NCBI GenBank assembly: GCA_047495785.1
Contig: JBLDXI010000046.1
Location: 1,302,001 to 1,366,000 of the forward strand
Length of the DNA: 64,000 nucleotides
DNA from: Lepidodermella squamata
Lineage: Eukaryota; Animalia; Gastrotricha
Direction: 5' to 3'
Shown one piece after another: positions 26,180-59,499 of the stretch. The notes beneath the pieces are model-generated. The model worked only from the letters and a program-made list of their open reading frames with translations. It was not told where the DNA came from and ran no database searches. Each line of letters starts with the position of its first letter. Position 1 is the first letter of the stretch. Made by a program: the position numbers and the translations under genes.

Positions 26180-28519
26180 TTAAATATTTGACAAAGCTGA
26201 AAACTTGTCAATGCATGATCTAAACTCGGATACAACGAGATGATGCGATTTCATCTTTCGAAATTTCTCCGGGACAGTTTCATCGCACTTTGCTAGTGCC
26301 GCCAACAGAATGCCAGCGGATAACGAAATCGTCGCAGCTAGCATTTCGTTCTCTTTACACCGAGACTTGGGCGGAAGTGGAGCGCGAACAGTGACACATA
26401 AATGAATAATAAACTTATCAGGTTCCCATTTGAACTCAGGTTGCAGGGCATAGGGTACGAAACGAACCGGCTCGAAAATCGGCTGATTTCCCCCGATCAT
26501 CGAAGCCATGCACAGCAGAATGTTGGCGTAGTCGAACATGCTAGCACCCTCCTGCAGGCCTTCGTACAAAATGAGGCGAGCAAGCTCGGCGAAAGTTCGA
26601 GCCATTATCAACTTATTAGAACCTGATGCTAATCGCTTCCTATCATTGACATCACAGCCAGATCGTAAAAGAACAGCCAATAGACGGAAAGTTCCTAGAC
26701 GGTATAAGTCGTGCTTGATAACGCTTAATATCAGCTGACTCGCAGATCCACTAGCTGCGATCTGTTTCGCTAAGAACGGCTTCGAAGCCAAGCAAAGGAT
26801 TGAGCTGACCGACAGAACGTTTTGGAGTAGATTCTCCTTCAACGACCCCCATTTAGCATCGTCGTAATTGTAGTAGGTGAAAATAGAATTGAGCGAACGG
26901 GCAAGTCTATCGGCCACTTCGGGACATTCCTTGACCAGCTGTTCAAGTCGACCAGGTGTATATCGATAGATCGTCAACGGCAGCATGAATGATTGAACGG
27001 CATACATCAAACTTTCACATCCGGTTTTATTCAAATTAGCCAAATTTCCACTGAGAAATTCCAAACGGCAGGCGAAATGGGAAAAGGCAGGGTACATGCC
27101 GACTACACCACCTGGCAGCTTATCAAACTTGCCCTGGAATGCGACAAACAACTGACACCACCATTCAATGTAGGCTTTCATCAAGTTTTCATCGACAAGG
27201 GCTTGACGGGCATTGGCCGATGGTTTTTTCAGCAGTAAATGCTTGTGATCCGCAAAAGCTACAGCGGTTTGAAGCGCCATCAATTCCAGAAATTCTGCAA
27301 CTTCCTCAGCAGGGGTTTTCAGCAAATTATCTTGAAAATTAACATCCCGCACCACTAGCTGAAGCATCATCAGCATGAATTTAGCTGGATTAGGTTCGGA
27401 GGAATCTGTGTAAACAGCGCCTGGTTTCTTCAAAAACGGCTCGAAAAGGCAGATTTTCAGCAATCGAGCATACCAAACAGCTTTCTCGAATGGCTGCTGA
27501 TGGCTCGCTCGAATCGAGCCTGAATGTAGGTCTTTAAGCGTCATCAAATAGTCTGAGACCAAGTTGAGCCATTGATCGTAGAGATGGACCAAAGAACCAG
27601 GCTGGCTTCGAGCGATTCTAGCCATCATTTTGTCAGAAACAGCTGATTTACTTGAATTCTCGATAAAAGGCATCACCCAGTTGCCTTTTCTATAGAAAAA
27701 CTCGTTCATGCGCTGGTTTTCCGCGGCGAGAAACGTCCAGTTCGAGAGAAATTGGATGAATTCTTGAAGAAAATGAGTCTCAACCAGAGTAAGCGATTCG
27801 AAATTCACATTCGACAAGAAACCTGTCAACGTTTCGTTCGCTTCTAACATCTTCATGTAACGAGTTGAGTTCTTTTGAAACAACTTCTTCGACCCAGAGC
27901 GTCGTAGTGCAATGTGCATTGTTACATGTTGGCACAGGAACGTGAAAGCCGGCATTCGATCAAGCAAATCCTTGCCAGTTACCGATAGAAATCGTTCAAT
28001 CGTTCGATTCAAATCAGCGTCATCATGGCGGTACGTGACATCGCTCGGTTTCGTCCAAGGTTCCATTATTTTCCGCAGAACTTTGTCCGATTGTTCCATC
28101 TGGCGAAGGTAGGTTAGAGCGTAGTCGCAATGGCCGCCTTTGTACAAAACTTCGGCAACAGCCTTCAAATATCGGCACTTGGCGTCATCGTCCGAATCGT
28201 ACATAACGCGGCGAAAATTCATGTAAGCAAAGGCGCCGGCCTCCTCAAATCGCTGAGCAGCCGATAAGACTTCGACCAGCTTGTCAAGAATTTCATGAGT
28301 GAAATCGCCGGCGATTTCGGCTGATTTCAGCAGCAGCTGATAAGCTTCCTCGAATTTGCCTTCGTTGAGCGCGACTTGGCTTTGTTTGATAGCCTCAGAT
28401 GAATCGCTAAGCCGCTGATGCTTTTCATCGTCCGATATGAATTCGCGACAAAATTTCGCATAATATTGATGGACGTCTTCGCGAGTCTTTAAAGAACAGA
28501 TATCATCAATAATTCCCAT
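26180..28519 (-). CDS. Uncharacterised 779-aa alpha-helical protein with N-terminal TPR-like repeats, single exon
   Basis: 2.3-kb uninterrupted ORF with TPR-like segments (GKFEEAYQLL, QRFEEAGAF, GHCDYALTYL). No catalytic motif recognised. Confidence 0.7.
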   Translation of the reverse strand: MGIIDDICSLKTREDVHQYYAKFCREFISDDEKHQRLSDSSEAIKQSQVALNEGKFEEAYQLLLKSAEIAGDFTHEILDKLVEVLSAAQRFEEAGAFAYMNFRRVMYDSDDDAKCRYLKAVAEVLYKGGHCDYALTYLRQMEQSDKVLRKIMEPWTKPSDVTYRHDDADLNRTIERFLSVTGKDLLDRMPAFTFLCQHVTMHIALRRSGSKKLFQKNSTRYMKMLEANETLTGFLSNVNFESLTLVETHFLQEFIQFLSNWTFLAAENQRMNEFFYRKGNWVMPFIENSSKSAVSDKMMARIARSQPGSLVHLYDQWLNLVSDYLMTLKDLHSGSIRASHQQPFEKAVWYARLLKICLFEPFLKKPGAVYTDSSEPNPAKFMLMMLQLVVRDVNFQDNLLKTPAEEVAEFLELMALQTAVAFADHKHLLLKKPSANARQALVDENLMKAYIEWWCQLFVAFQGKFDKLPGGVVGMYPAFSHFACRLEFLSGNLANLNKTGCESLMYAVQSFMLPLTIYRYTPGRLEQLVKECPEVADRLARSLNSIFTYYNYDDAKWGSLKENLLQNVLSVSSILCLASKPFLAKQIAASGSASQLILSVIKHDLYRLGTFRLLAVLLRSGCDVNDRKRLASGSNKLIMARTFAELARLILYEGLQEGASMFDYANILLCMASMIGGNQPIFEPVRFVPYALQPEFKWEPDKFIIHLCVTVRAPLPPKSRCKENEMLAATISLSAGILLAALAKCDETVPEKFRKMKSHHLVVSEFRSCIDKFSALSNI

Positions 28520-29545: not shown

Positions 29546-31017
29546 TCAACCATCAATCGGTCCATCAGCCGTGTGATCGGCATAATTCGGGTAAGAAGCT
29601 CGAACAACTCGATCGTTAACCGGCATAACCGCCCGATAATTGTGATCAATCAAATGGCCATCTCGCGGCCTGTGCAGGTAATGAAAATGTTCCAATTGCT
29701 CCGAGCTAACAAGCAACGGATCGGCTAGTACCAGCCACGTGATACACTGAGACAACGGCGGCGTAGTTAGCGAACCTGGATACGTGAAATATCGCTCGAG
29801 GTTTTCCGGCATTAGAGCGCGTGGATGAATGCTAAAATGCAGCGGCATTTCATGGTCGTTGTAGTCGATTTCTTTCATATCCTCAATTAGCCGCTGAACT
29901 TCAGGATGCGCAACTTCTTTAGGGTGCACCTTCAAGAAAACGCCAATCACAGCTAAGCCATCTTCGTGCCTATAGAAAATAGATGGAAAATACATATTTA
30001 TTAAATCGAAATTTGGCACTAAATTAAAATTCAATAAATTAATTACTTTAAAAATAAATTAAAAAATTAGTTAATTAATAAAATTTAATTAATTAATTAA
30101 TTATTTAAGAATTAGCCAATAAATTCCTAGTTAATTTATAGCAGATATCACTCACTTGATAGCTTCGCCCATAGTCTTGTATTTGAACTTGTTAAAATGG
30201 ACGAAATGAAGCTGAAATAATTATGAAAATTATTAGAAAATTTGCAATAAAAATTGCGATTTTACTTCAGCTGGATAGCTGTGGTTATTGATGGTATGCT
30301 CACTTCCATGAACTTTATGCGAAGGCCCCCAATGGCCATGAAATTGAACCAGCTGATATTCGTCCTTCAAAGGCCCTCCACCGATCGCTAGCAAAATTAA
30401 TTTAAAAAAAAATCAATTAAATTTGAAAAAATTACTCGCAGGAATATCTTGGCTGAAGTTGACTTGAAACGAATGGCCGCTGTTGAAAATCGTGGTCGCC
30501 TTGCAGCGTTCGTAATTGACGAGAATCGCGCCTAGACTTTCGTCATACCTGACCCATTTCGCCGTCGTATCGATGTTAATTGGACTTTGGTGAGATCCGC
30601 AGCCTTCGGGAAAAGCCTGGGCCCACGATTGCGGCCCGTGTTCGTCGTAGTCCCACTCGGTTTGACGACCCTGAGTCGACAGGAATTTTCTACTATTTTT
30701 CAAAGATAGAAGCGCCGGCAAAATTAGGAACATTTTACTCGAGACTTTTTATCATCGATTCACCTAATAAAATTGCGGTTTTTCACGGCATTGAAGCGGT
30801 TCGATACAGGTGTCGTCGAGGTTAGGACCCTGGCGATGCGGTTTTGGGACTCGTTGGCGCCACGCAAATTGCCACTTGAATGAGAAGGTAATAATTCTCA
30901 CTAGGCGAACGTTGAACTCTTATGAAATGCAAAAAATTAAATTAATTACCTGTTGCCAGGCAGCAAAGACCGCGTTGTTATGAATCGAATCAGCCGCCTT
31001 GCATTGTTCGTAAACAT
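29546..31017 (-). CDS. Alpha-carbonic anhydrase 1, with a putative mitochondrial presequence
   Basis: QSPINI, NSGHSF, QFHGHWG, SEH, ELHFVH, GSLTTPP and NYR motifs across exons. Upstream exons (31017-30950, ~30875-30764) give an Arg-rich N-terminus; the 5' structure is less certain. Confidence 0.9.
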
Positions 31018-31579
31018 AATTCCCACGGTAAAAAATCTAAATTTAACCGAAAAATGGCGTGCAAAAATGGAACTTCATTCAAGAGTAAAAAGATGAAGAT
31101 TGACGTTTCAAAGCCCTAGTTTCAGACAGTATGAGAGTGTGAGCTTTTTCCGATAGCGAAAAACAGGATAGCAACCACGTGCTATAGTGATATGAATAGT
31201 TTCCAGCTGGGATTCGCGTGCAGTTCTGATAATACCTATGAGGACTTGACTGAATTAATTACATGACCTTACATGCACCAGGAATTCATCATGCGAAGCG
31301 TGAAAACCTTATTCCTATTTTTTTATTTTATATATTATTATAAAAAGTTATAAATTATTGTAACGATAGAAAAATCTTTGATTTCGAGGATTAAAAATTC
31401 CAAAATTGAAAACCCAATTTGTCTAGTTTTACCTGATTTTTGGCGGCAATTTAAAAAATATTTTGGGCTGATCCTGGACAATTAATTAGGTCATTAGGTA
31501 ATTTAGACACTAATTTGCATATGCCACGGCCTAGATACTGACAAGATACTGACTTTGAAGAAGGGGTACTAATAAATAT

Positions 31580-32200
31580 AGGGTGCCAACTTTCATACAT
31601 AAATATGTATGAAATTTTTAACTTTCATACATATTTATGTATGACAAAATTAACTTTCATACATATTTTTTTCCATGAAATTCAAGCTGAAAACGTTAGG
31701 GAAATGCCAGATGACTAGGTTTCGGTTTATGTAAAAGAATAAGGGGGTTCCGAAAGCGAAGTCAAATTTTTCCGCATGAAAATGGTTTTTCGGGAAGCAA
31801 AAGGGCCCAAAAATCGAGATTCGTAGAAACTCGAAACTCGAACTATCCTAACCCTAACCTTGACCCTGAACCCTAACCAAATCCTAACCCTAACCCGAAC
31901 CCGAACCCGAACCCTGGCACCTAACCCTAATCCCTAACCCCAATTCCTAATCACAGTTTGGCTAAAAAACAAGATTTTATGAAAAAAAATATGTATGAAA
32001 GTTAATTTTGTCATACATAAATATGTATGAAAGTTAAAAATTTCACACATAAATATGTATGAAAGTTAAAAATTTCACACATAAATATGTATGAAAGTTA
32101 AAAATTTCACACATAAATATGTATGAAAGTTAAAAATTTCACACATAAATATGTATGAAAGTTAAAAATTTCACACATAAATATGTATGAAAGTGCACTT
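31580..32200. mobile_element. Foldback-like element: inverted arrays of a palindromic 32-bp unit around a (TAACCC)n-like core
   Basis: Left arm 31589-31680 is the reverse complement of 31975-32065. TTTCACACATAAATATGTATGAAAGTTAAAAA occurs 5 times (starts 32041, 32073, 32105, 32137, 32169; last copy truncated). Telomere-like tract at 31847-31950. Confidence 0.8.
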
Positions 32201-32596
32201 CGATAAATATATTTTTAAGTGGCGTCTACACTCCAAATTTTCCCGATTTTAAAAGTGAAATTCAGGTTGATGACGTCGATGTTTTCGTTTTATTTTCAGA
32301 CAGCTTTTAGGGGACTTTTATGTTTAGGAAATCCTGTTTTTTTACTGCTCGGCGTTGCAAAGCCAGCAAAAGTGTCCTATAGGAGGTGTCCGCGAACCCC
32401 GCGTTACGCTAGGACACAGACTTTTCAACACCTTCAAAAACTATGCCAGACCACAAGATTTATTCGGTATTATTTCTGGTCAACAAGCACAAGGTACCTA
32501 TCAAAAATACAAAATGAAAGTCGAAATATGAAACATTAAACAATGATACGGCATCGAAAATTCGAGTGAAGAACATGGTGGTGAAACGTGTTTTTT

Positions 32597-34163
32597 TCAG
32601 GGTAGGGGTAATATGCCATTTTTGCGGTAATAGTCGGCAAAAGATGCTCGAACAACGCGATCGTTAATAGGCTGAACAGGTCTGTAATTGTGATCTATCA
32701 AATGGCCATCGTCTGGGCTGTGCAAATCGTGAAAATGCGCCAGCTGCTCGTCACTCACCTCAAGCGGTTCAGCCATAACGATCCAGATGACACTCTCCGT
32801 TAAAGGCGGCGTCGTCATCGAGCCAGGATACGTGAAATAGCGAGAAAAGTCGTTAGGCAGCAAATTGATAGGATTAACGTCGAAATCAATTGCTACGTCG
32901 TGATTGTCATAGTCGATTAAATTGAAATCTTGTAGTAGATTTTGCAGCTCGGTATTTCTGTACTTCCTGTTTGCGGAAATTTTGAGAAAAACGGCGACGA
33001 CGCAAATACCATCCGGGAACTCAGCGGCTTCGTCCGCATTCAAATACTTATCGCGATTAAAGTGGACAAAGTGCATCTGAAATTAATTGAAAAATCAGTA
33101 AAAAATATTTTAAAAAATTCAAAAAATTCAAACCTCAGCCGGAAAAGAACGACCATCAATCGTGTGCTCACTCCCGTGAGAAGTATTAGATTCGCCCCAG
33201 TGAGCATGTATTTGAGCCTAAAAATCAGAAAAAAATTTAAATTTAAAATTTGAAAAATTCTCAAAAATATTCAAATTCTCCAAAAATACGGATTTTTGAT
33301 GTCTCGATATTACAGGTCAGGCCACGCGCGAGACTGCGGAGCCGATATCGATTTCAATTATCGATTTCACAAATCAGTGATTTTTCGAATTCGATTTCCA
33401 GAAAAAAAAAATTAAAATTAAAATTTATCGATAAAACCTCCAAGTACAATGAATTTGGACTCGACGTTGAAGTAAATAAATTAACAAATTTTTTGTTTAC
33501 TAACCAGTTGATATCGGTGTTGTCCTAATGGGCCGCCAAAAATCACTGAAATTGCGAGAAAAATTATTCTTCCAGCAATTTTTGTGTGTAAATATTTACG
33601 TGCAGGAGCGTTGATGTCAAATTTGACTTGAAACCCATAGCCGGTATTCCATATAGACAGCGCCTTGCATTTGTCGTAGCCGAATTTCAGCGGCGTGTGA
33701 ACGAGCGTAGCGTCGAATTGCGTCGTAAAGGCGTTCGTATCGATGTTGATCGGCGATTGGTGCGTGCCACGCCCGGCCGGGAAATAGTTGGGCCACAACT
33801 CGGGACCTTGACTCAATTTACGATAAACAGATACACGACTAGTTGTCAAACCACTCGCCGATAATCGGCGAGCATTCATTTTTTTGGCTAAAAGGTATCT
33901 TGAATTTTTTTCGCAGTGCACAAAAAATCCTAATTTGTTGTGATGACCATTTTTTTAAGGTTGATTAAAATTAATTTCCGCGCGGGGAGATTTTTATTAA
34001 TTTTTTGCTTACCATCCGTAGGCGAATATCCCCAGCAAGGTTTTTGTTTATTGTTCCGGCTGACGTGTTGATAACCCGGACGGGAACAATTCTGATCATC
34101 ATCAGCACTGACGCAACGATCAACGCCGTGTCGTCGGGCGAAAACTCCGAAAACACACGACAT
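32597..34163 (-). CDS. Alpha-carbonic anhydrase 2 (Tyr at the His64-equivalent position), 5 exons
   Basis: WGY, QSPINI, WNTGYGFQV, QIHAHWG, SEH, EMHFVH and GSMTTPP. All junctions are GT-AG and in frame. Confidence 0.92.
33310..33480 (+). repeat. Partial copy of the dispersed repeat, in a CA2 intron
   Basis: CTGCGGAGCCGATATCGATTTCAATTATCGATTTCACAAATCAGTGATT. Confidence 0.6.
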
Positions 34164-34526
34164 CGAGGATAAAAGTCCGTAAAATATTGAAAATTCAGCT
34201 GTTTTGCTGAACACTTATTGCTATTAAGATTTTCGCGTAAAAAACGAAAAGCATGTTCGCCAAAAAGTGTGTAGGAGAGGATAAGATCCGGGCCGATATA
34301 GCACGCAAGCGCGAATGTCCTCTCGAGTTTCAACATCGATTTTTTTCCTTCGAACGTGCGTAAAAAATGTCTCCTGCGGCTCGTTTTTTTTCAATAAACT
34401 CGCTTTAATGACCATAAATACAGGCAAAACATTAAATTAACAGAACGAATTTGCATAAAAACATCTCTAAAACTCTCAACAAAGCCAAATTCACGGGGTT
34501 GGAACAGCAAAGAAATAATTGTTTCT

Positions 34527-35610
34527 TCAATTTTTTTCGTCGATCGCTCGTTTAACAATGTCGCAATTTATGTAGTCCTGAAACGCCGCTCTAACAACGC
34601 GTTGATGCAGCGGTTGGACGGGCCTGAAATTGTGATCGATGTGATGCCCGCTGTGTAAATCGTGCAAATCGTGAAAATGGCTCAGTTGATCGGCGCTAAC
34701 TTCCAACGGTTCGGCAATTAAAATCCACGTGACGCACTCGGACAGCGGCGGCGTAGTCAGCGAGCCTGGGTAGGTGAAATACCGCGTTAAATCGCTAATG
34801 GGTATAAAATCGCGCGGGTGAACGCTGAAATCGAGCGGAACGTCGTGATTATCGAAGTCGATCAGTTTAAAGTCTTCAATCAAGCGCTGCAGCGTTGGGT
34901 GTTGTTTGTTGCTGGTCACCCTGAGAAAAACGCCGATAACAGCCAGGCCGTCCGGGTGTTTAGCGGCTTCGCTTACGCAGCCGTATTTTTTGTTGTAATG
35001 GACAAAATGCAGTTCGGATGGGAAAACTCGGCCGTTAACTGTGTGCTCTGAACCGTGATCGTGAGATCCGTGGCCCCAGTGTCCGTGAAACTGGGTCAAT
35101 TGGTACTCCTCATCTTGGAAAGGCCCGCCGCTCAAGACTAGGGAATTGAAAAAAATTGAAAAATTGAAATATTAAAATCGAAAATTGAAAAAATTCAATA
35201 AACTATTCAAAAATTTTTAAAACTTTAATTAAATTTAAGAAGGTCGTTTGCGTACTGGCTGGTGAATTTTCGTCGAATCGAACTTGAAATCCATGGCCTG
35301 AATTGAAAATGGACAACGCTTTGCAATGGTCGTAGTCGATAGTTAGAGGACCCAATGAGTGGTCGAACTTTGTCGATGAAGCCGTAGTATTAATGTCAAT
35401 GGGTGACTGGCGATGGCCACGGCCCTCCGGGAAGTGCATAGCCCACGAGTGTGGTCCTATGAAAAATTGAACCAACGTAAATGCGGCAAAAAATGGTACC
35501 AAAATGGACCTACCGTCTTTGCCTTCATAGCCCCATTCGTGCTTATTAGGATTTGAATGCTTATGCAAATATTTCGACATTTCCTCCTGATCTAAAGATT
35601 CCCTACTCAT
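34527..35610 (-). CDS. Alpha-carbonic anhydrase 3, cytosolic type, His-rich, 3 exons
   Basis: WGYEG, QSPIDI, NSGHGF, QFHGHWG, SEH, ELHFVH, GSLTTPP and NFRP. No signal peptide. Confidence 0.95.
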
Positions 35611-36816
35611 CGCGTATATGCACAGAGCAAAAAAATATTTTCAGAGCAGGAAAATATAACGCAAAGCGCTATACTGGCTTATTAAATATTTCAAGAGAAA
35701 AGCAATGGAAAAAATATTGGATTTTTCATTTTCCGATAGCTGCTAATCACCATTTTTTCATTTAAAAGCATCAAATGGCAGCTTTGTATGACTGAAATCA
35801 TCTCAGCATGGATAATGTGAGGAATATGATAATAGCATGCTAAAAAACTACAAATTTAATTTTTGCGGTTTTATTTATAGCTTAAAGGCGAAATATCCTC
35901 AAAATTATGTAAAATACGGCGAAAATCATGAATGCTAGAATGATTCTAGAAGAAATGGGAGACAGCCCAGGTAAGGAATACGAGCTATGATTTACAATCA
36001 CAGGTGCGCCACAATGTATGTAATGATGTAAAAAACACGATGAAAATATTGTAATGCTATAAAACGCACGGATGCGAATAAAAAGAACGCGGAAGTTTAT
36101 TGTTGCGTTCACTTTTGCGACTTCGTTATTCGATAGCTTCAAGCTATAATGAGCAGCGTTGGCTACATTCTCAACCTTATTAGAGGGAACAACTTATTTG
36201 AAAATTTTCCAGAGCTATCAGTACAGCCTAGCTAATTTAACGCGTTATAACAAGAAAATTTATGAACAGGTTAAGTTATATAGCTTCCTTATCTTAATAC
36301 ATTCAGAGAAATGCCGGTCATCAGCTGTATATAATATAAGAGGGGAAAAGTTGAGGGGTCACGTTTCAGCGACTTGTAGTTTGTTTTTTTTTCCTAAATT
36401 CAGCCTGTATTTTGAACATATTATAATATATACGTGACATTTTTACGGCCATAATAATGTTTTTTTCAATCAAAATGACGAGACATGATTTTTTAATTTT
36501 CTTTATTGCGCTAAAAAGGTAGTTTTTTCACCTATAACACATGTTCGAAGACCGGTTTACTCATTTTAATCATTATATCAACAAAAATTGCTCGATATAT
36601 AATACGCATATATTTCGCTATAAAATTAAAGAAAATTACAATCGGTATTCTCGTAAACGAGAAAAACTCGATATATATCATCCATCATGCTTGATAACAG
36701 AACGAAAGTTTTGAAAAAAACTGAAATGGTATGCAAAACTAGACAGAGAAGGAAAAGTACGAGACATTTCTTGTTATTCTCGATGCATGTTTTTCTTGCA
36801 TGAATTCGCATCCATT

Positions 36817-39049
36817 CTATTCGGAACAGGCGTTGACGTGCCGATGGTCGTTGAGTGCAAGATCGGCGGGCGGGAACGAGGCGCGAACAATGCGGCCGTT
36901 CAACGCGCACGGTAAACGGATATTATCGTCGACGCGTTCGAAGTTTGGCGTGCGGCGCATTTCACGCAACTATAATAAAATCATCAAAATTATTTGAAAA
37001 AATGATTCTTAATTTTTTTACCTCTGCTAATTGCGCGGCTGTGAAGGTTACCGGGTCGGCTGTTAACAGCCAAGTGACACACTCGTGAAGCGGTGGCGCC
37101 GTCAGCGAGCCGTCGTACGTGAAATAGCGGTCGAGTTTCTCGTGGTACATGTCTTGAGGCCGGCTGGCACTCGCCGGCATGGCAAGGTCGTACGTGCGAT
37201 AGCGAATCAGTTTGATCTGATCGATTGCGGTTTGGAACGTGGCCGCTGCTTTGCCGGGTTCGCCGATTTGCACGAAAAACCCAAGTACGGCCAAGCCATC
37301 AGGGTGGTTAATACTTTCCAGGAATGTGCCGTACTTCGCTTTATTGAAGTGGACAAAGTGAATCTAAAAAATGGAAAAATTAATTTTAAGATTGAAATTA
37401 AAATTTCAAAATAATTTTTTTTTATAATTTTGAAACTTTTAAAGAATCTTCAATTCTCAAATTAAAATTGAAATTTCAAATTTTATTAACATTTCGAATC
37501 TAAAAAATTTCATGACATTTCGAAAATTCATAAAATCGATTTTTTTTACCTCTGCTGGGTAAATTTTGTTATTCACGACGTGTTCGCAGCCGTGGCTAGC
37601 ATCATCCGCACCCCAATGTAGATGGTACTGAACGAGTTGATAGGAACCAGTCAAAGGTCCTCCACTGATTGCTGAGAAAAAAAATCGAAATTGTTTCAAA
37701 AATTACTGAAATTATTGCTAAAATTACTCGCTGGGCAGTTAGGGTCGAAATTGACCTGGAAGGCGTGGCCGTTGTTGAAAATAGTCGTGACTTTACACTT
37801 GTCGTAGTCGATTTTCAACGGTCCCAACGAAGCGTCGTGTTGCACATTCGGCGCCAGCGTGTCGATGGCAATAGGCGACTGGCGTTTGCCGTTGCCGCTC
37901 GGGAACGACTTGCACCAACTGTGTGGACCTATAGCGATTAGCACTTTCGGGAAACAATGAACATAAACGAAAAATTGCAACCATTATCACAGCCGTAGCC
38001 CCACGCCGGCGGGTCTTTCTTCAAGTTTGAACACTGGGCTCGAATTGCGGCTTCTTCGTCACGGGCCTTCTTCAATTCGGCGTCGACATCGGCCGCGGCT
38101 AGCCACGGGTCGGCGACTACTTCGCTGATTGTCACGCTCGAACGGTTTGCCAAAAGACGTTGAGTAAGTGCTGCGAAACCATTAGAGTAATTGCTAAACG
38201 AAGCATCGCTATTTGGCCTAAATTAATCATGGAATAATTGATATTTTCAACAAAAATTCAGAACATACCATTTCGATGATTCATCGTCAATATTTTCATA
38301 GGTAACACCGTTCTAGAAAAAAATGAAATTATTTTGCTGACTCGAAATTCATTTTAATCGAACCGGTAGATGCTGAGCTGCTAAATGGAATAAAAGAGCT
38401 CCGAGGGAAAAAATGTCATCCGAGGCACTTCGGGGTCTAAAATCGGAAATTAAAGTTTTTTATTTTTCCAGGTTAATTTTTCATACCGATTGGCTTGATT
38501 TTGCAAGACGCCGACTTTGATGATGCGGCGCGAGAGCGACAGGAAAACAGTCTAAAAAAATCAATAAAAATTCTAGAAAAATTCGAGAAAATAATTTTAC
38601 CTTGGCATTAAGATTCCCGTGAATAATCTCGTTATCGTGAAGGTATTTAATAGCTCGGGCAGTTTGGGCGATCCAGCTTCGAATCGTGTCTTCGGCAAAA
38701 GGTTTCGCCACTGATTTCTGCTTCGAAATCGCATGATGCAAGCTGCCGCCGTCGTGAAAATCCAGAACGGCAAACGCCTTAGTAACATCGCTGCTATCAT
38801 CCAAAATTCCAACGACTCGGACCACATTTTCATGGTTCAAATTCAAGAGTTTTTGCTTGGATTTTCCGGCCTGGAATTATAATATAAAAAAATAGGAGAA
38901 ATTTTAAATTTTTCCTATAATTTTACCTCATCAGCCGAAATTTGTTTAATGGCAAAAAGCTCGCCGTCGGTCTTCCTGCGAACGATCATAGTTCGATTGT
39001 GGTGTGGCCCATCGATATCACGCACGACAGCATAATCTCCGAATGACAT
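36817..39049 (-). CDS. NEK-like pseudokinase / alpha-carbonic anhydrase fusion, 10 exons, 542 aa
   Basis: Exons 39049-38927, 38870-38601, 38551-38487, 38436-38364, 38312-38269, 38217-37982, 37928-37728, 37671-37550, 37363-37022 and 36969-36817 total 1629 nt, all GT-AG and phase-compatible. Kinase motifs: FAIKQ, HENVV, YLH..IIHGNL, DIFSLG, DPWL. CA motifs: WGY, QSPI, NNGH, QYHLHWG, CEH, EIHFVH, GSLT. Confidence 0.85.
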
Positions 39050-42000
39050 AGTTATTTATTAAAATTCACAAACAATCCTAGATTAAAAATAGCGTTGAAT
39101 TGCGTGATGATTTTGCTCGTTAAAAAAATCCAACTCTGATGATGCGATCATGTCCTAAAAATTCGGTTCGTGACGACGAAAGGAGAGTAGACGACGACGG
39201 CTATACACTCGACGAACATCGATTTTGCGCGTGCCCGGGTAAAAAAAACGCGCATAAATCGATTGAGAGAGAAAAAACCCTCTCGCGGCTATCGAGTGGA
39301 AAAAACAGAACCACGCATGCATACGACTGACGAGATTGCAGTGGAAATAACGGCGGATTCAATTTGTCTAAAAAATGTGAAATATGAGCCGTTAGTTTGC
39401 CTTTCACAGCCAGGCAGGGTGGCTACGAGACGCGGGCTGCTGTAGAATATAATCTCGCGATAAAAAGCTAGTTGAGCTCTGAGATTTTACGACCAGACGT
39501 TTTTTAGTTACTTATCTTATATCCTTATAATATAAGGAAATAAGCCTGTCATAAACGCAAAAAAGCGGCGTTCTTGGGTGCTGGTGTGAGTGAGAAGTTG
39601 GAAGAATAATGAAAAAAACTTCTTCGACCTCAGCCTTTATACTACAGTGGCAGTGAAAAAAACGCGCATGGTGTAGAAATATAGCCTCGAGGCCATTGGC
39701 AACACGAATCATCTCAGCTAATACGTCAGTAGCTGGTGTTTGTCATTAACTTTGAGGCCGTGTCGAGTGTTCCCGGTGGTTTTTCTGATGATATAACTTG
39801 TAGATATTGTGATAAGATTGCGATGATAATGGTGATGATTAAACAACTTGTAAAAAGCATGAGTCAACTAGCCACATCATTAACGCAGGTGGAGTTTTTT
39901 TTACCCGCCCTTGAATAGGTATATATCATAGCTAAAATAGCAATGTTAAACATATTAGCGGTAGGTTATTATTCCGTGAATGATCATGTGACTGACGTAA
40001 ATGCCGTCTGGCTATGTTTGTTGTTAAACATTCTCGCTTACCACAAGAATTCTAGAAAATACTCTTTTGTGTAGTAGTACTTAACTGCATAATATGCTAA
40101 GCATCATGAGTGTAGAGGATGAACGCATAAATAATCTATTTGCCGTTCTATTTGCAGCGACGCGTGTTTATTTTTTGTGGTTTATTCATAGGCCCATGTT
40201 TTTCTTTTACTAACTTTTAACCTCAAAAGCGAGACATGATTTAATTGCATTATTAAAAATAAATGAAGGTGAAGAAAAGCCTCGGAGAAAAGGAATATTT
40301 TAACAAAACAAATCGGTGTAATTTGTTGAGGCTACCAATAAAGGGGTATGATTGAGATTCTGATCTGCAAATCAAGCTGAGTTCTATTTACGGCTGTTTC
40401 GCTTCTTTTTGAGGCTATTATCAACTGGAGACTGAACACTTCAAAATGCAAAGTTGATAAAACAGAAACGAGATATCACGTGAATTTCTAACATTTCTCA
40501 AGTCTTCGCCCTGACGATTATTAGTTTCAACAATCCTTAGAATTAGAGGCAGCCAAGAATTCACCAGCGGAGAATTATTTTCGCGACACGAAAATAAATC
40601 TGGCAATCAATTGCGGCTCTCTTTACATAGCTTATGGATTGTAGCGTTCAATTCAATTTGGCAGAAAGCACGGCGTGGACGATCTATCAGACCGATGTGC
40701 AGCTGATTTGAACCATGGGAGTGTGGAGATGGGAAAAATGGCGTCTCGCTCACTTTCTGAGCTCCTGCTTTCGTACTCCTTGCAACTGATTGAACATTGA
40801 TATCTTACAGTGAGCAAGCTAGTCAGAGAGGATTAAAACCTAGTCAATGTCACACGCCATACATTTTCCAACGACTCGGTAACGCGTCAGACTTGAAAGA
40901 ATTTAATAAGACTCCTCATCATGGTGCGATAATCCTCAGTATTTCATAAATATCTGGCAAAATCTGAGAAAGAAGATGCGGTTCTAAAATGCAAAATCTG
41001 ATCATTTTACCCGAAATCGCCTTATTTATGGCAAATCCGTGGCCAAATCAACCACCGTTTTCATAAAAATCGATCAGAATTTTCAGTTTTCAGATTAATG
41101 CAAAGAATTACACTCATAAAATATATCAAAATTGTCATTTATATTTTGAGTTTAATTTTTGTTACTGATTTTGGAATAATATGTATTTAACCTTGACATT
41201 ATTTTCAAATTTTGTTTGCGCGGCAAATGAGGTTTGCCAGTGCGTGCAGGCTGGCCTATTCGGTGTGTGTACGGAAATACTTTTGCCACCACTTGTTGAT
41301 TCCCAGAAATATGTAAATGCTGTAAATGCTAACAGATCGCGTATATCATCAAGCAGATCGTCTTCTCTTCCCTTCTAGTAGTTCTCCTATATTTGTTGCG
41401 AAGCTAAGGCTAACCAATCTCTCGTAAGCTTTTTTTTAAATCAAGTCGTCACTTGGTCTTTGTTTTATCGCGTTGTTTGTTGTGGCCCCATGGCCCTCTT
41501 ACCACTTACTTTCTCTGTTCTTGAAAGTGTTCGTTTCATTCCGCAATTTTGTACGTAATTCATCTCTGTGATCCACGCAGTCTATTGTCGATTGGGTACT
41601 GCAATATTGTCAGTTCTATTAGCTTCCATTCGAAGAGTTGTAAAAATCGCGACTGCTTTTTCACACAAAAATTATTAAGAAAAATGACTGAGAACCGTCC
41701 CTTTCATTTTGTTCTCATTGCCAGCAGAATATTGTAGTTGTAGTTGTGTGTGATGAACATCGGCATTCGGCATTCGGTAGTCAAATGAATCACTGCATGA
41801 TCTTTTGGTTTCTTGAGGATGTATTAAACAACTGTTATTGACAACTGCTCCAAATGCGAATTGTTCGCATTAAAAGTTCTCCTGTACTGGTGTTATCTCC
41901 CCTAACTAATATCTAATATTCCGTGATGTTGTCTATTTTTCAGTTTTATTAAACATGAAACGCGTGAATAGCCTGGCTACTGGCTACTCATTCAGCTGCA

Positions 42001-45900: not shown

Positions 45901-48900
45901 GATGCTTAAACTCCTGATGCAACATTTATACAAGTTTGTCATCGAAATTGTATTCAATTTTCTTGAATTTTGAGTTCTTAATTTTTTTGCAGAGTTGCGT
46001 GTCACAGTTCTCAGAATTTGATGACTGTGTCGAATTTAGGCGTTTGCTTCGGGCCGACGTTGATGCGCCAGCGTGAAGAAACCATGGCCGCCATTATGGA
46101 TATCAAATTTTGCAATGTTGTCGTCGAGATTTTGATCGATAATTATCATCAGATTTTCGAAACGGCGCCGTCTAGTGCCAGCATCGACCAGATGCGCATC
46201 AGCTCACCTGTCAACAAGCCAGCTGCTGATGAAGTACTAGCAGTGACCGCAGCCGGGGCAGGTAAGAAAAATGGTTGAGGATTTTCTGGTGGAAAAATAA
46301 TCGCAATTTTTCTTTGATGATTTGATTAAAGCTCCCTATTCTAGTCCGATGAATGCTTTTCAGGCCTATTTTAAGGTGGCTTATCGTGGCTTTGTGATGT
46401 TTTGCGCTGTTTTGAGCTGCGAAATTGTTTTCATGTTGTAAATGTGTGACATAAAAGTCATTTCACCTTGCTTCACAGGGTTTTGGTAAAAATTGATAAA
46501 TTATTTTTGAAAAATTGGGAATAGTTTCTGCAAAACCGATATTGAGTTCCGGATTCGATTTTACAAATCTCGGATTTTTCGATATTTAAAATCTTGGTAG
46601 CCAACATTGAAATTTTTTTCACTTGCCTGGGAATACCAGGTAGTCCATTTTAGCGGTCAGTTAAGGAGTTCTACTTTTGTCTGCAGAGCCGATATCGATT
46701 CCAAGTATCGATTTTACAAATCAGTGATTTTTCCGGTATCAATAGTCTTGGAACTCGACATTTATAATTTTGCTACATAGCTTGGGCACCATGTAGCTAA
46801 AATAAAAAATCCTAGGTCCAGGTAGGACATCGGTATCGATCAACAAACAAAAAAGACGGAATCGCAAAGAATTGGAAAAATGAAACATTTAATACTGTAT
46901 CCTCGATTTTAGCCGTGCCAAGATTTTTGTCTTTTGTCGTATTTTTGCTATACCTATTTCGTGGCTTTAATTGTATTCAGTGTTAATTGGATTGAAAATT
47001 GGCGTAATTGTCTAACATTTTGTGTTTTTCTTTAGCTGCCCTGGCGAACCGACAACCGGTAGCGATGGCACCGTCTCGCACCTCGAGTACACCCGCGCAC
47101 GTGACCAGCCGGTTTTTCCCCGCCTCGCCGCCCTCATACCGCGAAGTGCCCATCGAATGCGACGGCCTGGCGCAGCACCACCTCGAATCTTCCTCCCCGC
47201 CAACAACAGCAACCGGCGGACGATTAGCATCAGCCACTTCGACTCCAACCTCGAGCACAGCCCGGCTACTATTCGCCGGCGCGGCTGACGTGAAACCTCT
47301 ATCGCCAACGTCTCCATCGTCGAAAAATTTGAGAGAAAGCGCTGATATCCTGCCTTTCATCGGCATGGCTCTGCTGAGACCCCCAGCTGAAACGACCGTG
47401 ACTAGTACCAGTAGTAGTACGTCGACTACTACTACTGCTACGGCCGAAATCCGGCAAACCTCGGCGTCATTCTCCGGCGGCGTAGTAGTCGGGTCGGTGG
47501 TTTCTAACGCATCGTCGCCTGAGGCGCAACGGCGGCGCAATTCCAACTCGATGAGCGTAGCGTCGGTGGATTCGGCGAATTCGTCGCCGTTTGCGCTGCG
47601 GCGGCAGGCGGGTCATGTTGCGCGCATGGGCCGGCGCGTTGTCGTGCCGGGGCCGGGCGGGCGGCGGGCGCGGGCGCTCTACGACTGCGTGGGTGACACC
47701 GAGGGCGAGCTGTCGTTCAACACTGGCGACGTCATTGAAAACAGTAAGCCATGAAATCATTTTTTTTACGATTCGGCAAATTTGGGTCCAAATTTTGTTA
47801 GAACCTGGGAATTTCGGTACAAAACCGGGTAAAATATCGAAATTTATCGATGTTAAATTATGGTTATGTTCATGGTTAAATTAGGAGGCCTTTGGGGAAA
47901 TCGAAAAGTTAATGGATAGTGCTTTTCCTAGGTTTTTTTTGTGAAAATGATAATAATTGCGAACATTCTTGAAATCTCGAAAATTGATTGCAAAAGAATT
48001 CAAATGGCGGATTCATTAATTTCTTATGGAAAATATCACGGCACATCTTTAAAGAGCAATATTTTATACATTGGAATTTTTCATATTTACTATTGAACTG
48101 TATGACAAAGCGCATGACAAGCGAAGACGAACGTCGACTAAATGTCAGTCAAATGAGATGGCTTAGGAATATTTGTGGTATTACAATTAGGGATAAGGTG
48201 AGAAATGACGTGATTAGGACGCGATGTGGAACTGAACAACTATCGACCAAATTAGCGAGACAGCAATTAAGGTGGTACGGCCATGTGGCTCGCATGGACC
48301 CCGGACGCCTAACACGCAAGGTTCGATACTGGGAGGTCCCTGAAGGATGGAAACGTCCTAAGGGAAGACCTAAATTAAGGTGGACAGACTGTGTTAGGAA
48401 AAATTTGGGACGGTTGGGTATAAAATCTATCGAGGAGGCGGACAGTCTAGCCCAAAATAGGAGAGAGTGGCGGGCTAAAATTCATAGTTTGGGTCATTTA
48501 ACTTCTTCGTCTCGGGACTTCGGGGATTTCTTTCTTGATTCTCTATTCAGATGATTTTGGGCTGATTAGGATCGGTCTCCGACTGGTCCTCCTCCGACAC
48601 GCGCCATGCTTGGCCCGTTACCACAGTAACGGACCCGGCATGGCGTGTACACCGGAGTGAATTTTATTCTTTAGCACACTCTTGTTGTTTTGTTTTGTTT
48701 TGTACCTCTTTTGTAACTGTGCTCAAAGAATAAAGAAAATGTAATGTAATGTAACTATTGAACTGGAATTTATTTTTAATTCCTACCCGGGCTAATGTCT
48801 TTTTTTCTCATACGACTGGCCGGAGACTTCGAAGAGCAAAACTCGAAAATATTTTTTTTGCCTCTTGAAATACTAAGGGGAATGATATTTGGGAAAATCT

Positions 48901-52534: not shown

Positions 52535-54339
52535 TTAGGAGGTCTTTTCCAAGGTCGCTGATATTTGAGCCATAACTCTGAGCACGACTTCCTCGCGAAA
52601 CTGCGGCGCAACGATTTGAACGGCAACCGGTAGCCCTTGGCTGTCAGTTGACATGCCCTTCTGAATCGCCCGATGAAACAAGTCTCGCTTCGCTGGGTAA
52701 TCCGCCATTTTCGCTTCGTCCTCAGCGGTGACGTTAGTAACCGGGCAAACTCCCGCTGGCCAGTCGAGCATGTTGAAAAGCACGGTGTAACTAAGCGCTG
52801 CTAGCGTGTCCCTCGGAGCGTTGAGTGGTAAGGCCGGGCAAGCGAAAGCCGGATATAGCAGCGCGTCGAACGACTGAGCTGCGAAAGCTTTACCGAATTC
52901 TCGCCTGTAGTGGCGAACCTTGACAAACTCTCGATTTGCGTCGTGCGGGTGGTCACCGACGCGGACAGATCTCAGGATATCAGCAGGTAAGTCTCCGATG
53001 AAAGGCCTCGCAACCATGCCGATGAAACGTTTAAACCAAAACGGCCATTTCGAAGTTCTGATTGTCATCATGTTCTGATAGCAGACTTCAACGTCTTCTT
53101 CGATAGCTCGGATGACTTCGACTGTCCCATCGACTGTCATAGTTCTAAGGTAGAGTAAGAAAGCGTCTCGAACTTTCGGTGGTTGCCATTCCACGAGTTT
53201 GTGCCCCTGCTTTTCCAACGCCTCCTTCGCTAGAAGAACAGCTCGTTTCATCGCTGGAACTGTTTCGATAACTTCGTCTGATAAACAGTAGCCAATTGTT
53301 AGTGGCTTCTTAGCTTCGAACAAATCTTCGCGGAACGGGACAGGCGCCATGTTGTTGTAGAGAAATTTATCGAATGTAGCTTTCGAGTAAAGCAGCCGGT
53401 GCAGAGTGACTAGGGTTGAAAGGTCACGAGTGATGAAGCCCAATGCGCCGAAATCGCGAACAATCGACCGCGGGAAGTAGACTTGCGACGGGAAGGTTCC
53501 GCCATGCAGCATTCGGGCTGAAGTCGGTTTCAGCGTGAAACAGCCACACCATGCAGCCTATAAAATTGTTAAGACATTGGTTTGTAAAAATAGGGAAAAA
53601 TTACTGGAATTCTTAGGCTTCCACCTGCGTCAGAGCCAACTCCTAAAATAGACGCTTTCGCCCCTACAAGGGCTCCTTCTCCACTTGTAGAACCGCCAGG
53701 TGATCGTTCTGGGTTGAAAGGATTGCGAGTGATACCATGAACGCCATTTCTCGAGTCGAACGACATCATAGCTTGTGGCAAATTTGATTTGACAAAAGGG
53801 ATGCATCCAAGTTGCTCCAGAAACTGTACGATTGGAGCTGTTTCATGGCTGATGAATCTGCCTAAATATTGGCCATGGCCTTCTGTCGACTCTGTGCCAT
53901 CGATAAAGCAGCACTCTTTCACGCTGATCGGGATGCCATGTAGCGGTGATTTGTCGCTAATTTTAGCAAGAGATCTAGCTTTTTCCTCAGCACTTGCGAT
54001 GAACTCTGTGACTGCATTAGTTTCATCGCTGTTGTGCAGCGCAGCAGTTTGATAAGCATGGAGGACATCAACAGGTGATAATTGATTGGCAAGAAGTTTG
54101 CGGCGCAACTCATCGAAAGACAGCGATGTAATTTCAGCAGCGTTTTTGCAATCAAGCGAGCGAATCTTATCCCGACGTTTGTTTTCACTCGACCGGAAGT
54201 CGTTGATTTTCCGTCGAAGTTCAGCGCGTCTTCGATTGCGCCTAAGAGCCTTTTGAGCGAAGTACATTGCATAGATTGCGCCGAATGCCCAAATTATCGG
54301 CTGACATTGGTCAATTAGTAAATAGAAGTTATCCAACAT
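52535..54339 (-). CDS. FAAH: Fatty acid amide hydrolase-like amidase, copy 1, 2 exons (54339-53605, 53557-52535), 585 aa
   Basis: N-terminal TM; amidase signature PLHGIPISVKE, PGGSTSGEG and GSDAGGSLRIP|AAWCG with the Lys-Ser-Ser triad; C-terminal GLPVAVQ. Confidence 0.92.
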
Positions 54340-57683: not shown

Positions 57684-59499
57684 TTATTTTTCGGAAATTT
57701 CGGTCATTACTCGCAGAATGACTTCTTCGAAGTATTGCGGTGCAACAACTTGAACAGCCAGTGGCAGGCCGACAGTTCCGCTAATGTTAGACTCGTACAT
57801 AAATTTATGAAAACGGTCCTTGTCAGCTGGATATAACGCCATCAGCTGTTCATCCTTCTCCGTCACTTTCGTCACCTGCGAAATGCCAGATGGCCAGTCC
57901 AGGAAGTTGAAAATCGCCTCATAGCAGAGTGAGCCTAAAACTTCGCGCGGCATGTCCAAAGTCAAAGCTGCAGATGGGTACGACGGGTAGACCAACGCGT
58001 CCAGTTTCGCGTTATGAAAAGCCTCGGCAAATTCCTGGCGGTACTTTCGCATAGCCCGGAATGCGACGTTGACGTCATGCGGGCGGCTGCCAAAACGCAG
58101 ATTTTTGATCACGTCAGCCGGGAAATCGCCGATAAAAGGCCGTGAAAGTGCAGCAATAATCAACTTCAACCAGTAAGGCGTTTTCATGGTAGCCAATGAG
58201 TAAACGTTCGGGTAAGCGATTTCGATGTCGTTATCGCAGGCTTCTATTGTTTCGACATAACCATCTACTGCTATTATCCGGAAATACATCAGCATAGCCT
58301 CAAGGCTTCGAGGAGGCCTCCATGCGACAAGACGATGTCCACGTTTCTCAAGCGCTTCCTTAGCTTCTTTAACAGCTCGCTTCATCGCAGGCGTCGTTTC
58401 GAACGCTCCGTCAAAGTCGCAATAGCCAATTGTCAGCGGCTTCTTAGAGGAATACAGCTCCTCTCGGAAAGGAATTGGAACCAGCGAACTGATCGGGAAT
58501 CTTTTAAACGTCTCCTCGCTGTACATCCTTCGGTGAACGGTTACAAGCGTCTCGACGTCCTGAGTGAACAGGCCCATGCATTGGAAGTCTCGAACTGCGG
58601 CTCTTGGGTAGTAAGCTGTCGGGAACGTTCCGCCATTCAACATTCGGGAAGAAGTCGGTTTCAGGGTGTAACAGCCACACCATGCAGCCTGTAAAGAATC
58701 GGAAAATTACGAATAGATTATAGATTATCGAGAGATTTGTCTATATCCTTACTGGAATTCGAACACTTCCTCCGAGATCCGATCCAACACCTAGAATTGA
58801 TGCTTTCGCACCGACAATCGCACCTTCACCACTTGAAGACCCACCAGGACCTCGTTTCAAGTTATGCGGATTCCGGGTCATACCGTAAATCGCGTTCCTA
58901 GAGTCGTAAGACAGCATAGCCTGCGGGATGTTGGTCTTCGCGAATGGAATGCATCCCAAGGCCTCAAGAAATTGAACTATCGGCGACGGTGGCATGCCGT
59001 AGAAGTCGCCGAGGTATTGCGAAAACCCACCCGTCGCCTCAGTATTCGGATAGAAGCAACACTCCTTAATGGTAATCGGAACGCCGTGAAATGGCAGTCT
59101 CTCCTCAACAGGGATAGCGTCAAGCCTTGCCGCCGTGATCTCAGCCCTGTCGAGGATGAACTCCGATATCGGGTTAATCGTGTCGCATGTCGCTAGAGCC
59201 GCGTGTTGGTAGGCATGAAGAACCTCAGTTGCTTTCAATTCGCCTTTCCTCAACTTCTCGGCGAGTTGGCCAAAAGACAGGGCTAGAATCGCTTTCTGAT
59301 TCGCCGGAACTTGCCGCGTCTTGAGTCTGTCGCGCCTCTGCTTTTCGGCCTGTTGAAACGCTCGAATCTTAGCGCTGAGTCGCCTTCGTTTACTGAGGCC
59401 ACGCAGGGCTCGGAGCAGGACTAAGGCACCTACAGACCCTGCAGCGGCTAAAGCAAGAGACCGCCGGTCGATTCGCTGCACAAGCTCCCTGATGTCCAT
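57684..59499 (-). CDS. FAAH: Fatty acid amide hydrolase-like amidase, copy 2, 2 exons (59499-58753, 58688-57684), 583 aa
   Basis: PFHGVPITIKE, PGGSSSGEG and GSDLGGSVRIP|AAWCG. Same intron position as copy 1. Confidence 0.92.

What the first reader, a model, noticed from the sequence alone, without database searches (positions are those of the whole stretch)
38100..39049. The fused kinase domain is a compact pseudokinase with the activation segment deleted
Seen: the Gly-loop is replaced by DIDGPHHNRT, the VAIK Lys is kept (FAIKQ), the alphaC Glu appears absent, HRD becomes HGN, and DFG is lost (KVGVLQ). Only about a dozen residues separate subdomain VII from IX (DIFSLG), with no APE. Known: HGN catalytic loops typify JAK JH2, NRBP and guanylyl-cyclase kinase-homology domains, several of which regulate an adjacent enzyme domain in cis. 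KPFAEDTIRSWIAQTARAIKYLH is NEK-like. Inference: an independent origin of the pseudokinase-regulates-adjacent-enzyme design; the intact frame over 6 exons argues for selection.
Basis: partly seen in the sequence, partly recalled or inferred. Interest (0 to 1): 0.7.

Follow-up and report, generated by a model that had tools for sequence, protein, structure and literature searches.

The report
Shortened dead kinase fused to carbonic anhydrase
A transcribed gene of a small invertebrate joins a catalytically dead, shortened NEK-type kinase domain that lacks its whole activation segment to an apparently working carbonic anhydrase, a domain pairing I found nowhere else, though what the dead kinase does there is untested.

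Summary
A 10-exon minus-strand gene (39049-36817, 542 aa) encodes a kinase-like domain (aa 1-230), a charged linker and an alpha-carbonic anhydrase with an intact active site. Spliced contigs of one public run confirm all nine introns. This includes the exon 3-exon 4 joint, so no hidden exon restores DFG/APE, and the exon 6-exon 7 joint that ties the kinase part to the enzyme. The Gly-loop reads DGPHHN and the beta3 Lys is kept. The alphaC Glu position is Ser, HRD is HGN, the Mg-binding Asn is Thr and DFG is VLQ. About 25 residues are missing relative to more than 40 kinases. The nearest solved structure is NEK1. NEK-like paralogs in the same genome share the two introns flanking exon 4, so the deletion sits at the 5' end of that exon. 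Differences to a ~2% diverged sample give pN/pS of about 0.2 for the kinase part (4N:6S) and 0N:14S for the enzyme, with no coding indels. No orthologue and no other kinase-carbonic anhydrase protein turned up. A regulatory role in cis is plausible but untested. HGN domains with equally short activation segments occur elsewhere, so I class this as a new variant of a known kind. The scan's index lists this stretch twice; that follow-up was withheld.

The parts
39077..39079 (-). Trans-splice acceptor region. The mRNA carries a spliced leader 5' of about position 39077, followed by a 28-nt 5'UTR with an in-frame TAA 9 nt before the ATG.
   Evidence: Loose end at 39079 in X1. The 23-nt loose sequence occurs 33 times in the genome in tandem arrays. 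One copy is followed by AG|GTATGT. The sequence was read.
38927..39049 (-). Exon 1 (aa 1-41): beta1-beta3 of the N-lobe. The Gly-rich loop is replaced by DGPHHN (aa 13-18, 39013-38996). The beta3 Lys35 is kept in FAIK (38956-38945).
   Evidence: alignment; joint 38870|38927.
38601..38870 (-). Exon 2 (aa 42-131): shortened alphaC (Ser45 at the Glu position), beta4-5, hinge, alphaD-alphaE and a catalytic loop reading HGNLNAK (HGN at 38621-38613).
   Evidence: Pfam Pkinase E 3.2e-12; NEK1 best solved-structure match, E 4.6e-8; alignment.
38487..38551 (-). Exon 3 (aa 132-152): beta7-beta8. Thr132 sits at the Mg-binding Asn position, and VLQ (38509-38501) sits at the DFG position.
   Evidence: Its 3' intron is at the same place and phase as in paralogs L002, L006 and L008.
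38437..38486 (-). Intron 3 (50 nt). It has no room for a hidden exon, and the deletion abuts its acceptor.
   Evidence: Joint 38436|38487 at depth 523 in X1, with no alternative joint listed there.
38364..38436 (-). Exon 4 (aa 153-177): a truncated exon. A short bridge (RPRSASD) runs straight into subdomain IX/alphaF (DIFSLG at 38417-38400). The equivalent paralog exon encodes 50-52 aa that include the activation loop, P+1 loop and APE.
   Evidence: L002, L006, L008; for the size of the gap.
38269..38312 (-). Exon 5 (aa 178-191): C-lobe segment after alphaF.
37982..38217 (-). Exon 6 (aa 192-270): C-lobe end (..ANRSS..DPWL), a charged linker (aa 231-262, 38102-38007) and the first residues of the carbonic anhydrase (AWGYG). 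It is a single open exon that spans both domains.
   Evidence: It is unique in the genome. The joint to exon 7 has depth 523.
36817..37928 (-). Exons 7-10 (37928-37728, 37671-37550, 37363-37022, 36969-36817; aa 271-542): alpha-carbonic anhydrase domain. His64, His94, His96, Glu106, His119 and Thr199 equivalents are all present.
   Evidence: Pfam Carb_anhydrase on exons 7-9. Best solved structures are CA XIII and CA II, with HLHWG, EH, HxVH and SLTxPP aligned.

Best explanation
A single, spliced-leader trans-spliced mRNA encodes a 542-aa cytosolic protein.

Shown:
- The N-terminal 230 residues descend from the NEK-like kinases that are expanded in this genome.
- Every catalytic element except the beta3 lysine is gone: Gly loop, alphaC Glu, catalytic Asp, Mg-binding Asn and DFG Asp.
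- About 25-27 codons at the 5' end of exon 4 were removed. That deletes the activation loop, P+1 loop, APE and alphaEF.
- The C-terminal 280 residues are a cytosolic-type alpha-carbonic anhydrase with a complete zinc and proton-shuttle site.

Inferred:
- The hydrophobic core elements persist: the His of HGN, Leu at the DFG-Phe position, the alphaE, alphaF and alphaH-I signatures, and the alphaF Asp.
- The domain therefore probably still folds as a small rigid kinase-like body that cannot phosphorylate and probably does not bind ATP.
- It most likely serves as a non-catalytic docking or dimerising module. It would place, or allosterically modulate, the attached enzyme so that CO2/bicarbonate/pH handling is local to whatever the NEK-derived surface binds.
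For: - Gene model and motifs.
- All nine splice joints are in RNA-derived contigs. Intron and upstream bins have depth of about 1.6, against several hundred to about 1,900 in most exon bins.
- Spliced leader.
- Pfam Pkinase on exon 2 and Carb_anhydrase on exons 7-9.
- NEK affinity: NEK1 is the top solved structure. The closest paralog, L002, is an active-looking NEK-like kinase whose own top hit is NEK1. Other paralogs carry HRD(L/I)K and DFG. The best single-domain database hit is named a NIMA-related kinase by its source.
- Deletion size and position.
- Constraint: 4 nonsynonymous against 6 synonymous differences in aa 1-235 (pN/pS 0.20, binomial p 0.013). The enzyme domain has 0 against 14. 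All indels in X2 are non-coding.
- Intact enzyme active site.
Against: - No experiment or structure model bears on folding, ligand binding or any effect on the enzyme.
- Selection rests on 10 coding differences to one close sample, and only 40 of 52 differences were displayed.
- Two of the four nonsynonymous changes fall in the degenerate loops (H16N, S156N). That fits relaxed constraint there.
- No orthologue was found, so long-term conservation of the pseudokinase is unknown.
- The contigs are short, so no single record spans the whole mRNA.
Confidence: 0.6

Rival explanations
1. Tolerated relic. A read-through fusion of an upstream NEK-like gene to the first gene of a carbonic anhydrase array left a decaying kinase remnant. 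It has no function of its own, and the protein works simply as a carbonic anhydrase with an N-terminal appendage.
For: - Loss of nearly all catalytic motifs plus two deletions.
- Nonsynonymous differences occur only in the kinase and linker part (6), against 0 in the enzyme part (Fisher p 0.006).
- There is no paralog or orthologue of the domain.
- Exon 6 is a chimeric exon, as expected from a read-through fusion.
Against: - The frame is open over six exons with canonical splice sites, all used in RNA.
- pN/pS of 0.2 is significantly below neutral.
- Core hydrophobic signatures are retained.
- The enzyme domain is only 36-62% identical to its tandem neighbours, so the locus is old. That leaves ample time for an unconstrained 690-nt frame to break.
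Confidence: 0.25
2. Ligand or pH/metal sensor. The remodelled pocket, with Lys35 retained and two histidines in the former Gly loop (DGPHHN), binds a small ligand, a metal or protons and passes this to the enzyme through the helical linker, as receptor guanylyl cyclase kinase-homology domains do.
For: - The beta3 Lys is retained while everything else is lost.
- There is a His-His pair in the loop over the pocket.
- A charged, helix-like linker lies between the domains.
Against: - One of the two histidines is polymorphic (H16N in X2).
- There is no Gly loop, no alphaC Glu and no Mg ligands.
- There is no binding data.
Confidence: 0.1
3. Annotation artefact. This would mean two separate genes wrongly joined, or a normal kinase whose activation-segment exon was overlooked.
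For: None found. Before the read data this was a reasonable worry for a hand-built model.
Against: - Joints 38436|38487 and 37928|37982 are present at the same depth as all the others, and no alternative joints are listed.
- Intron 3 is 50 nt.
- Exon 6 is one open frame across the domain boundary.
- Only one spliced-leader site is seen, at the 5' end.
Confidence: 0.03

Closest known systems
NEK (NIMA-related) protein kinases, e.g. human NEK1 (PDB 4apc)
   Same: - NEK1 is the best sequence match for exon 2.
- The alphaD-alphaE signature (F.ED.I..W..Q...A.KYLHD..I.H) is shared.
- The genome's own NEK-like paralogs are the closest relatives and share the introns flanking exon 4.
   Different: - NEKs are active kinases with GxGxxG, alphaC Glu, HRD, DFG and a full activation segment.
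- Here only the beta3 Lys remains and about 25 residues are deleted.
- Identity to the best paralog is only 43% over the most conserved exon.
JAK JH2 pseudokinase domains
   Same: - HGN catalytic loop (HGN/DPG/APE rows in PMC2754085).
- From my own knowledge, JH2 reads HGNVCAK, close to HGNLNAK here.
- The dead kinase fold sits in the same chain as a catalytic domain that it regulates.
   Different: - JH2 keeps a full-length activation loop with DPG and APE, and binds ATP (own knowledge).
- It is of tyrosine-kinase origin, and its partner is a kinase.
- It is not among the top sequence matches here.
Kinase-homology domains of receptor guanylyl cyclases
   Same: - HGN, HGR or HGS catalytic loops (PMC2754085).
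- The pseudokinase lies N-terminal to a non-kinase enzyme domain, with a helical linker between them (own knowledge).
   Different: - They are transmembrane receptors and keep DYG..APE and a full-size domain.
- The partner is a cyclase.
- They come from a different kinase group.
VRK3 pseudokinase
   Same: HGN with neither the DFG nor the APE motif recognisable (mouse VRK-family entry in PMC2754085). It cannot bind ATP and acts as a scaffold (abstract of PMC2639636).
   Different: VRK3 keeps a full-length kinase fold (295-aa domain). It is a stand-alone protein, not fused to an enzyme.
Short HGN-type domains in tandem-kinase proteins (Drosophila 'zak2-like' proteins P0001, P0002, P0052; metagenomic P0069)
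   Same: HGN/NGN catalytic loops, with only 15-17 residues from the DFG position to the subdomain IX Asp. The spacing here is the same.
   Different: - Identity is about 25-33%, so they are not orthologues.
- Their partners are further kinase domains, not a carbonic anhydrase.
Carbonic-anhydrase-like domain of receptor tyrosine phosphatases PTPRZ/PTPRG
   Same: A carbonic anhydrase fold and a phospho-signalling fold in one polypeptide (PMC10178973; details from my own knowledge).
   Different: It is the mirror image. There the carbonic anhydrase fold is the dead, ligand-binding part and the phosphatase is active. Here the carbonic anhydrase looks active and the kinase fold is dead.

Membership tests
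Eukaryotic protein kinase-like fold (Pfam PF00069) | Significant match to the Pkinase profile above the gathering score | tested here: met
Exon 2 alone scores 46.9 bits against a cut-off of 31.7, E 3.2e-12, over profile positions 52-122. Exons 1, 3 and 4 are too short to score alone.
Catalytically competent protein kinase | GxGxxG loop, beta3 Lys, alphaC Glu, HRD Asp, catalytic-loop Asn, DFG Asp, and an activation segment ending in APE | tested here: not met
   Only Lys35 is present. The other positions read DGPHHN, Ser45, HGN, Thr132 and VLQ. About 25 residues including APE are absent.
NEK family | Closest to NEK kinases by sequence, ideally confirmed by a kinome-wide tree or group HMMs | tested here: inconclusive
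   Best-hit evidence is consistent: NEK1 is the top solved structure, and NEK-like paralogs share intron positions. A NIMA-named protein is the best single-domain match to the kinase-like part in the local re-scoring. No labelled kinome tree or group HMMs could be run.
JAK JH2 / receptor guanylyl cyclase kinase-homology domains | HGN-type loop together with DPG or DYG, APE, a full-length activation loop, and TK or RGC sequence affinity | tested here: not met
   HGN is present. There is no DxG and no APE, the segment is deleted, and the best matches are NEK, ULK, CASK and Aurora rather than JAK JH2 or RGC.
Active alpha-carbonic anhydrase (Pfam PF00194) | Three zinc histidines (94, 96, 119), Glu106, Thr199 and the proton-shuttle His64 | tested here: met
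   Pfam hits on exons 7-9. HLHWG, EH, IHFVH and SLTAPP align to CA XIII and CA II. NNGHAF gives the His64 equivalent. Enzymatic activity itself was not tested.
Pseudokinase that regulates an adjacent enzyme in cis | Demonstrated effect of the pseudokinase domain on the activity of the tethered catalytic domain | not testable with these tools
   Only the tethering in one transcript is shown.

The most novel reading that the evidence does not exclude
The truncated NEK-derived pseudokinase is a functional targeting or allosteric module for an active cytosolic carbonic anhydrase. That would be a first natural coupling of a kinase fold to CO2/bicarbonate/pH chemistry. It would have arisen independently of JAK and guanylyl cyclase designs, and it would show that a kinase fold stripped of its entire activation segment can still serve as a regulatory body.
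Probability: 0.3. Interest if true: 0.65.

Novelty: new variant of a known kind. Interest (0 to 1): 0.45.

Why it matters
Pseudokinases tethered to enzymes, such as JAK JH2 and the guanylyl cyclase kinase-homology domains, are textbook allosteric regulators. This would be an independent, NEK-derived instance with an unreported partner, an alpha-carbonic anhydrase. It is also an unusually minimal fold that lacks the activation loop, P+1 loop and APE. It offers a natural test of how much of the kinase fold is needed for a non-catalytic role. The shared intron positions show how the compaction happened, by loss of the 5' half of one exon. If the domain proves to be a mere relic, the case is instead a dated example of slow domain decay after gene fusion.

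Tried and rejected
- **Word search.** The word-index protein search with exon 2 found nothing in the allowed length range.
- **Exhaustive search.** Exon 2 against 1.84 billion cluster representatives gave 720 kinase hits. None exceeded about 43% identity, and none of the best 150 carried a carbonic anhydrase domain. No orthologue is therefore available for dN/dS.
- **Database depth.** The collection seems to lack this organism and its close kin. A 779-aa single-exon neighbour found nothing, and an amidase neighbour's best hit is 59% identical, from an unnamed ENA metagenome contig. Absence of orthologues is therefore weak evidence.
- **Organism.** It remains unidentified. An Rfam scan of one locus carrying the leader sequence found nothing. 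The leader sequence is in no searchable paper.
- **Literature.** Searches for a natural kinase-carbonic anhydrase or pseudokinase-carbonic anhydrase protein found none. The GCN2 pseudokinase paper was not a precedent for a deleted activation segment. The pseudokinase survey PMC6997932 is not held.
- **Failed call.** One findings look-up failed.
- **Not done, by the operators' rule.** No family scan, database search, structure prediction or fold search was run on the joined 542-aa or 230-aa model. The joined translation existed only inside scripts built from the window file. There it was used for numbering, for local alignment to sequences already fetched, and for codon classification.
- **Rejected readings.** A hidden exon and two separate genes. 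Membership of JAK JH2 or the guanylyl cyclase family.

Full report
**Gene model.** The stated stretch lies on the minus strand of a eukaryotic gene with introns of 49-56 nt, plus one of 186 nt. A hand-built model with ten exons, all GT..AG, gives an open 1,629-nt frame of 542 aa. The exons are 39049-38927, 38870-38601, 38551-38487, 38436-38364, 38312-38269, 38217-37982, 37928-37728, 37671-37550, 37363-37022 and 36969-36817. Scanned exon by exon by reference, exon 2 passes Pfam Pkinase (E 3.2e-12) and exons 7-9 pass Carb_anhydrase. It existed only inside scripts built from the window file.

**Transcript evidence.** Two public runs hold the stretch.
- Run X1 behaves as RNA. Its contigs skip exactly the nine predicted introns with CT..AC ends, at word depth of about 370-650. 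Intron 8 and the upstream region have depth of about 1.6.
- The joint 38436|38487 links exon 3 directly to exon 4, and intron 3 is 50 nt. No unrecognised exon restores DFG/APE.
- The joint 37928|37982 links the last kinase-like exon to the first carbonic-anhydrase-only exon. Exon 6 is one open frame across the domain boundary.
- A 23-nt loose end 5' of 39079 occurs 33 times in the genome, partly in tandem arrays spaced about 680 bp. In one copy it is followed by AG|GTATGT, so it is a spliced leader.
- An in-frame TAA lies 9 nt before the ATG, so the protein starts at the kinase-like domain.

**The motifs.** Numbering is and alignment.

| Canonical element | In this protein |
|---|---|
| GxGxxG | DGPHHN (aa 13-18) |
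| beta3 Lys | kept (Lys35 in FAIK) |
| beta3-alphaC stretch | about 10 residues shorter |
| alphaC Glu | Ser45 |
| HRD | HGN (aa 125-127) |
| catalytic-loop Asn | Thr132 |
| DFG | VLQ (aa 146-148) |

- Eleven residues later comes subdomain IX, DIFSLG (aa 160-165). There is no APE.
- Across 44 split HMMER alignments to database kinases the shortfall is almost always 20-35 residues, with a mode of 25.
- Core elements persist: the His of HGN, Leu at the DFG-Phe position, the alphaE and alphaF signatures, the alphaF Asp, and an ..R....DPWL end. I infer, but have not shown, that the hydrophobic core can still assemble.

**Origin.**
- NEK1 is the best solved-structure match (E 4.6e-8).
- The genome (121 Mb) has no close paralog. 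The best is 43% identical over exon 2.
- That paralog (L002) is an active-looking kinase with GRGGFG, AIKQ, HRD and DFS, and its own best hit is NEK1.
- Most other paralogs carry HRD(L/I)K, and those whose alignment reaches that far mostly carry DFG or DLG.
- L002, L006 and L008 have introns at the two positions that flank exon 4 here. One follows the DFG position by 6-9 residues, in phase 2 where I checked it (L002). The other follows '..LP' in alphaF, in phase 0.
- In L002 and L006 that exon encodes 50-52 aa, including the activation loop, P+1 loop and APE. Here it encodes 25 aa.
- The deletion is therefore the 5' half of exon 4, abutting intron 3. That fits a shifted acceptor or an in-frame deletion.
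- Exon 6 has no other copy in the genome.

**The partner domain.**
- The carbonic anhydrase part best matches cytosolic CA XIII and CA II. It keeps HLHWG, EH, IHFVH and SLTAPP, plus the His64 equivalent.
- It heads a tandem array of four alpha-carbonic anhydrase genes on the same strand and is 36-62% identical to the others.
- The intron after WGY..G is shared with the next gene. I infer that the fusion joined a kinase 3' exon to the enzyme's first coding exon.

**Selection.** Run X2 is a DNA-like sample about 2% diverged.

| Region | Nonsynonymous | Synonymous | pN/pS | Binomial p |
|---|---|---|---|---|
| Kinase-like, aa 1-235 | 4 | 6 | 0.20 | 0.013 |
| Linker, aa 236-262 | 2 | 1 | 0.56 | not tested |
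| Carbonic anhydrase, aa 263-542 | 0 | 14 | 0 | 7.9e-10 |

- These counts come from the 40 displayed differences of 52.
- All six displayed indels are non-coding.
- Two of the four kinase changes hit the degenerate loops (H16N, S156N).
- The domain is constrained, but less so than the enzyme. The data are few and come from one close relative.

**Relatives elsewhere.**
- The word search found nothing.
- The exhaustive search found no protein above about 43% identity, and none of the best 150 has a carbonic anhydrase domain.
- The collection appears to lack this lineage, so absence of orthologues is weak evidence.
- Among the hits, Drosophila tandem-kinase proteins and a metagenomic protein contain HGN/NGN domains with only 15-17 residues between the DFG position and subdomain IX. 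Such compaction is therefore recurrent.
- PMC2754085 documents HGN in JAK-type and guanylyl cyclase pseudokinases, and HGN without DFG or APE in VRK3.
- No paper describing a natural kinase-carbonic anhydrase protein was found.

**Verdict.**
The third, dN/dS near 1, comes out against neutrality, but on thin data.
This is an independently derived, NEK-type pseudokinase covalently joined to an intact enzyme, but regulation in cis is untested.
- I rate it a new variant of a known kind, with moderate interest.

Noticed in passing
window 39077-39079; L013:1501-1530; 33 sites in G000 (e.g. C17:1137309-1142026, C19:1472966-1476087, C54:2837689-2839197): A spliced leader ending ..TCTGCGAATTTGATTTGTGTCTAAG is trans-spliced onto this mRNA. 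Its genes form tandem arrays spaced about 680 bp. It matches no Rfam family in the one locus scanned and appears in no searchable paper.
   Followed up: partly
window 29588-37928, minus strand: A tandem array of four alpha-carbonic anhydrase genes: the fusion, then about 35610-34527, 33921-32597 and 30655-29588. They are 36-62% identical to the fusion's enzyme domain. The first intron position (after WGY..G) is shared between the fusion and the next gene.
   Followed up: partly
window 36700-39300 in runs X1 and X2: The X1 RNA contigs carry both the window's haplotype and, at many sites, the X2-like haplotype. Two alleles about 2% apart are therefore both transcribed.
   Followed up: partly
P0001, P0002, P0052 (Drosophila busckii, D. 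grimshawi, D. subpalustris) and P0069 (ENA metagenome): These proteins have 2-5 tandem kinase-fold domains. The upstream domains carry HGN/NGN loops and very short activation segments. The last domain looks complete in P0002 and P0052. This is a JAK-like layout multiplied.
   Followed up: partly
window 26180-28519, minus strand: A 779-aa single-exon open frame with no detectable homologue in the 5.8-billion-cluster collection.
   Followed up: partly
window 52535-54339 and 57684-59499, minus strand: Two tandem fatty-acid-amide-hydrolase-like (amidase, PF01425) genes. The best database relative is 59% identical and comes from an unnamed ENA metagenome contig.
   Followed up: partly
window 47988-48554, plus strand: An open frame whose sequence (..[10 protein letters not shown]..) looks to me like the tail of a non-LTR retrotransposon reverse transcriptase. 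This is a reading by eye; no tool was run on it.
   Followed up: no
L002:781-1400, minus strand (G000:C19): In the closest active-looking NEK-like paralog, the exon after '..SLP' seems to continue directly into subdomain XI, so it may itself lack the alphaG region. Alternatively I missed a small exon.
   Followed up: no
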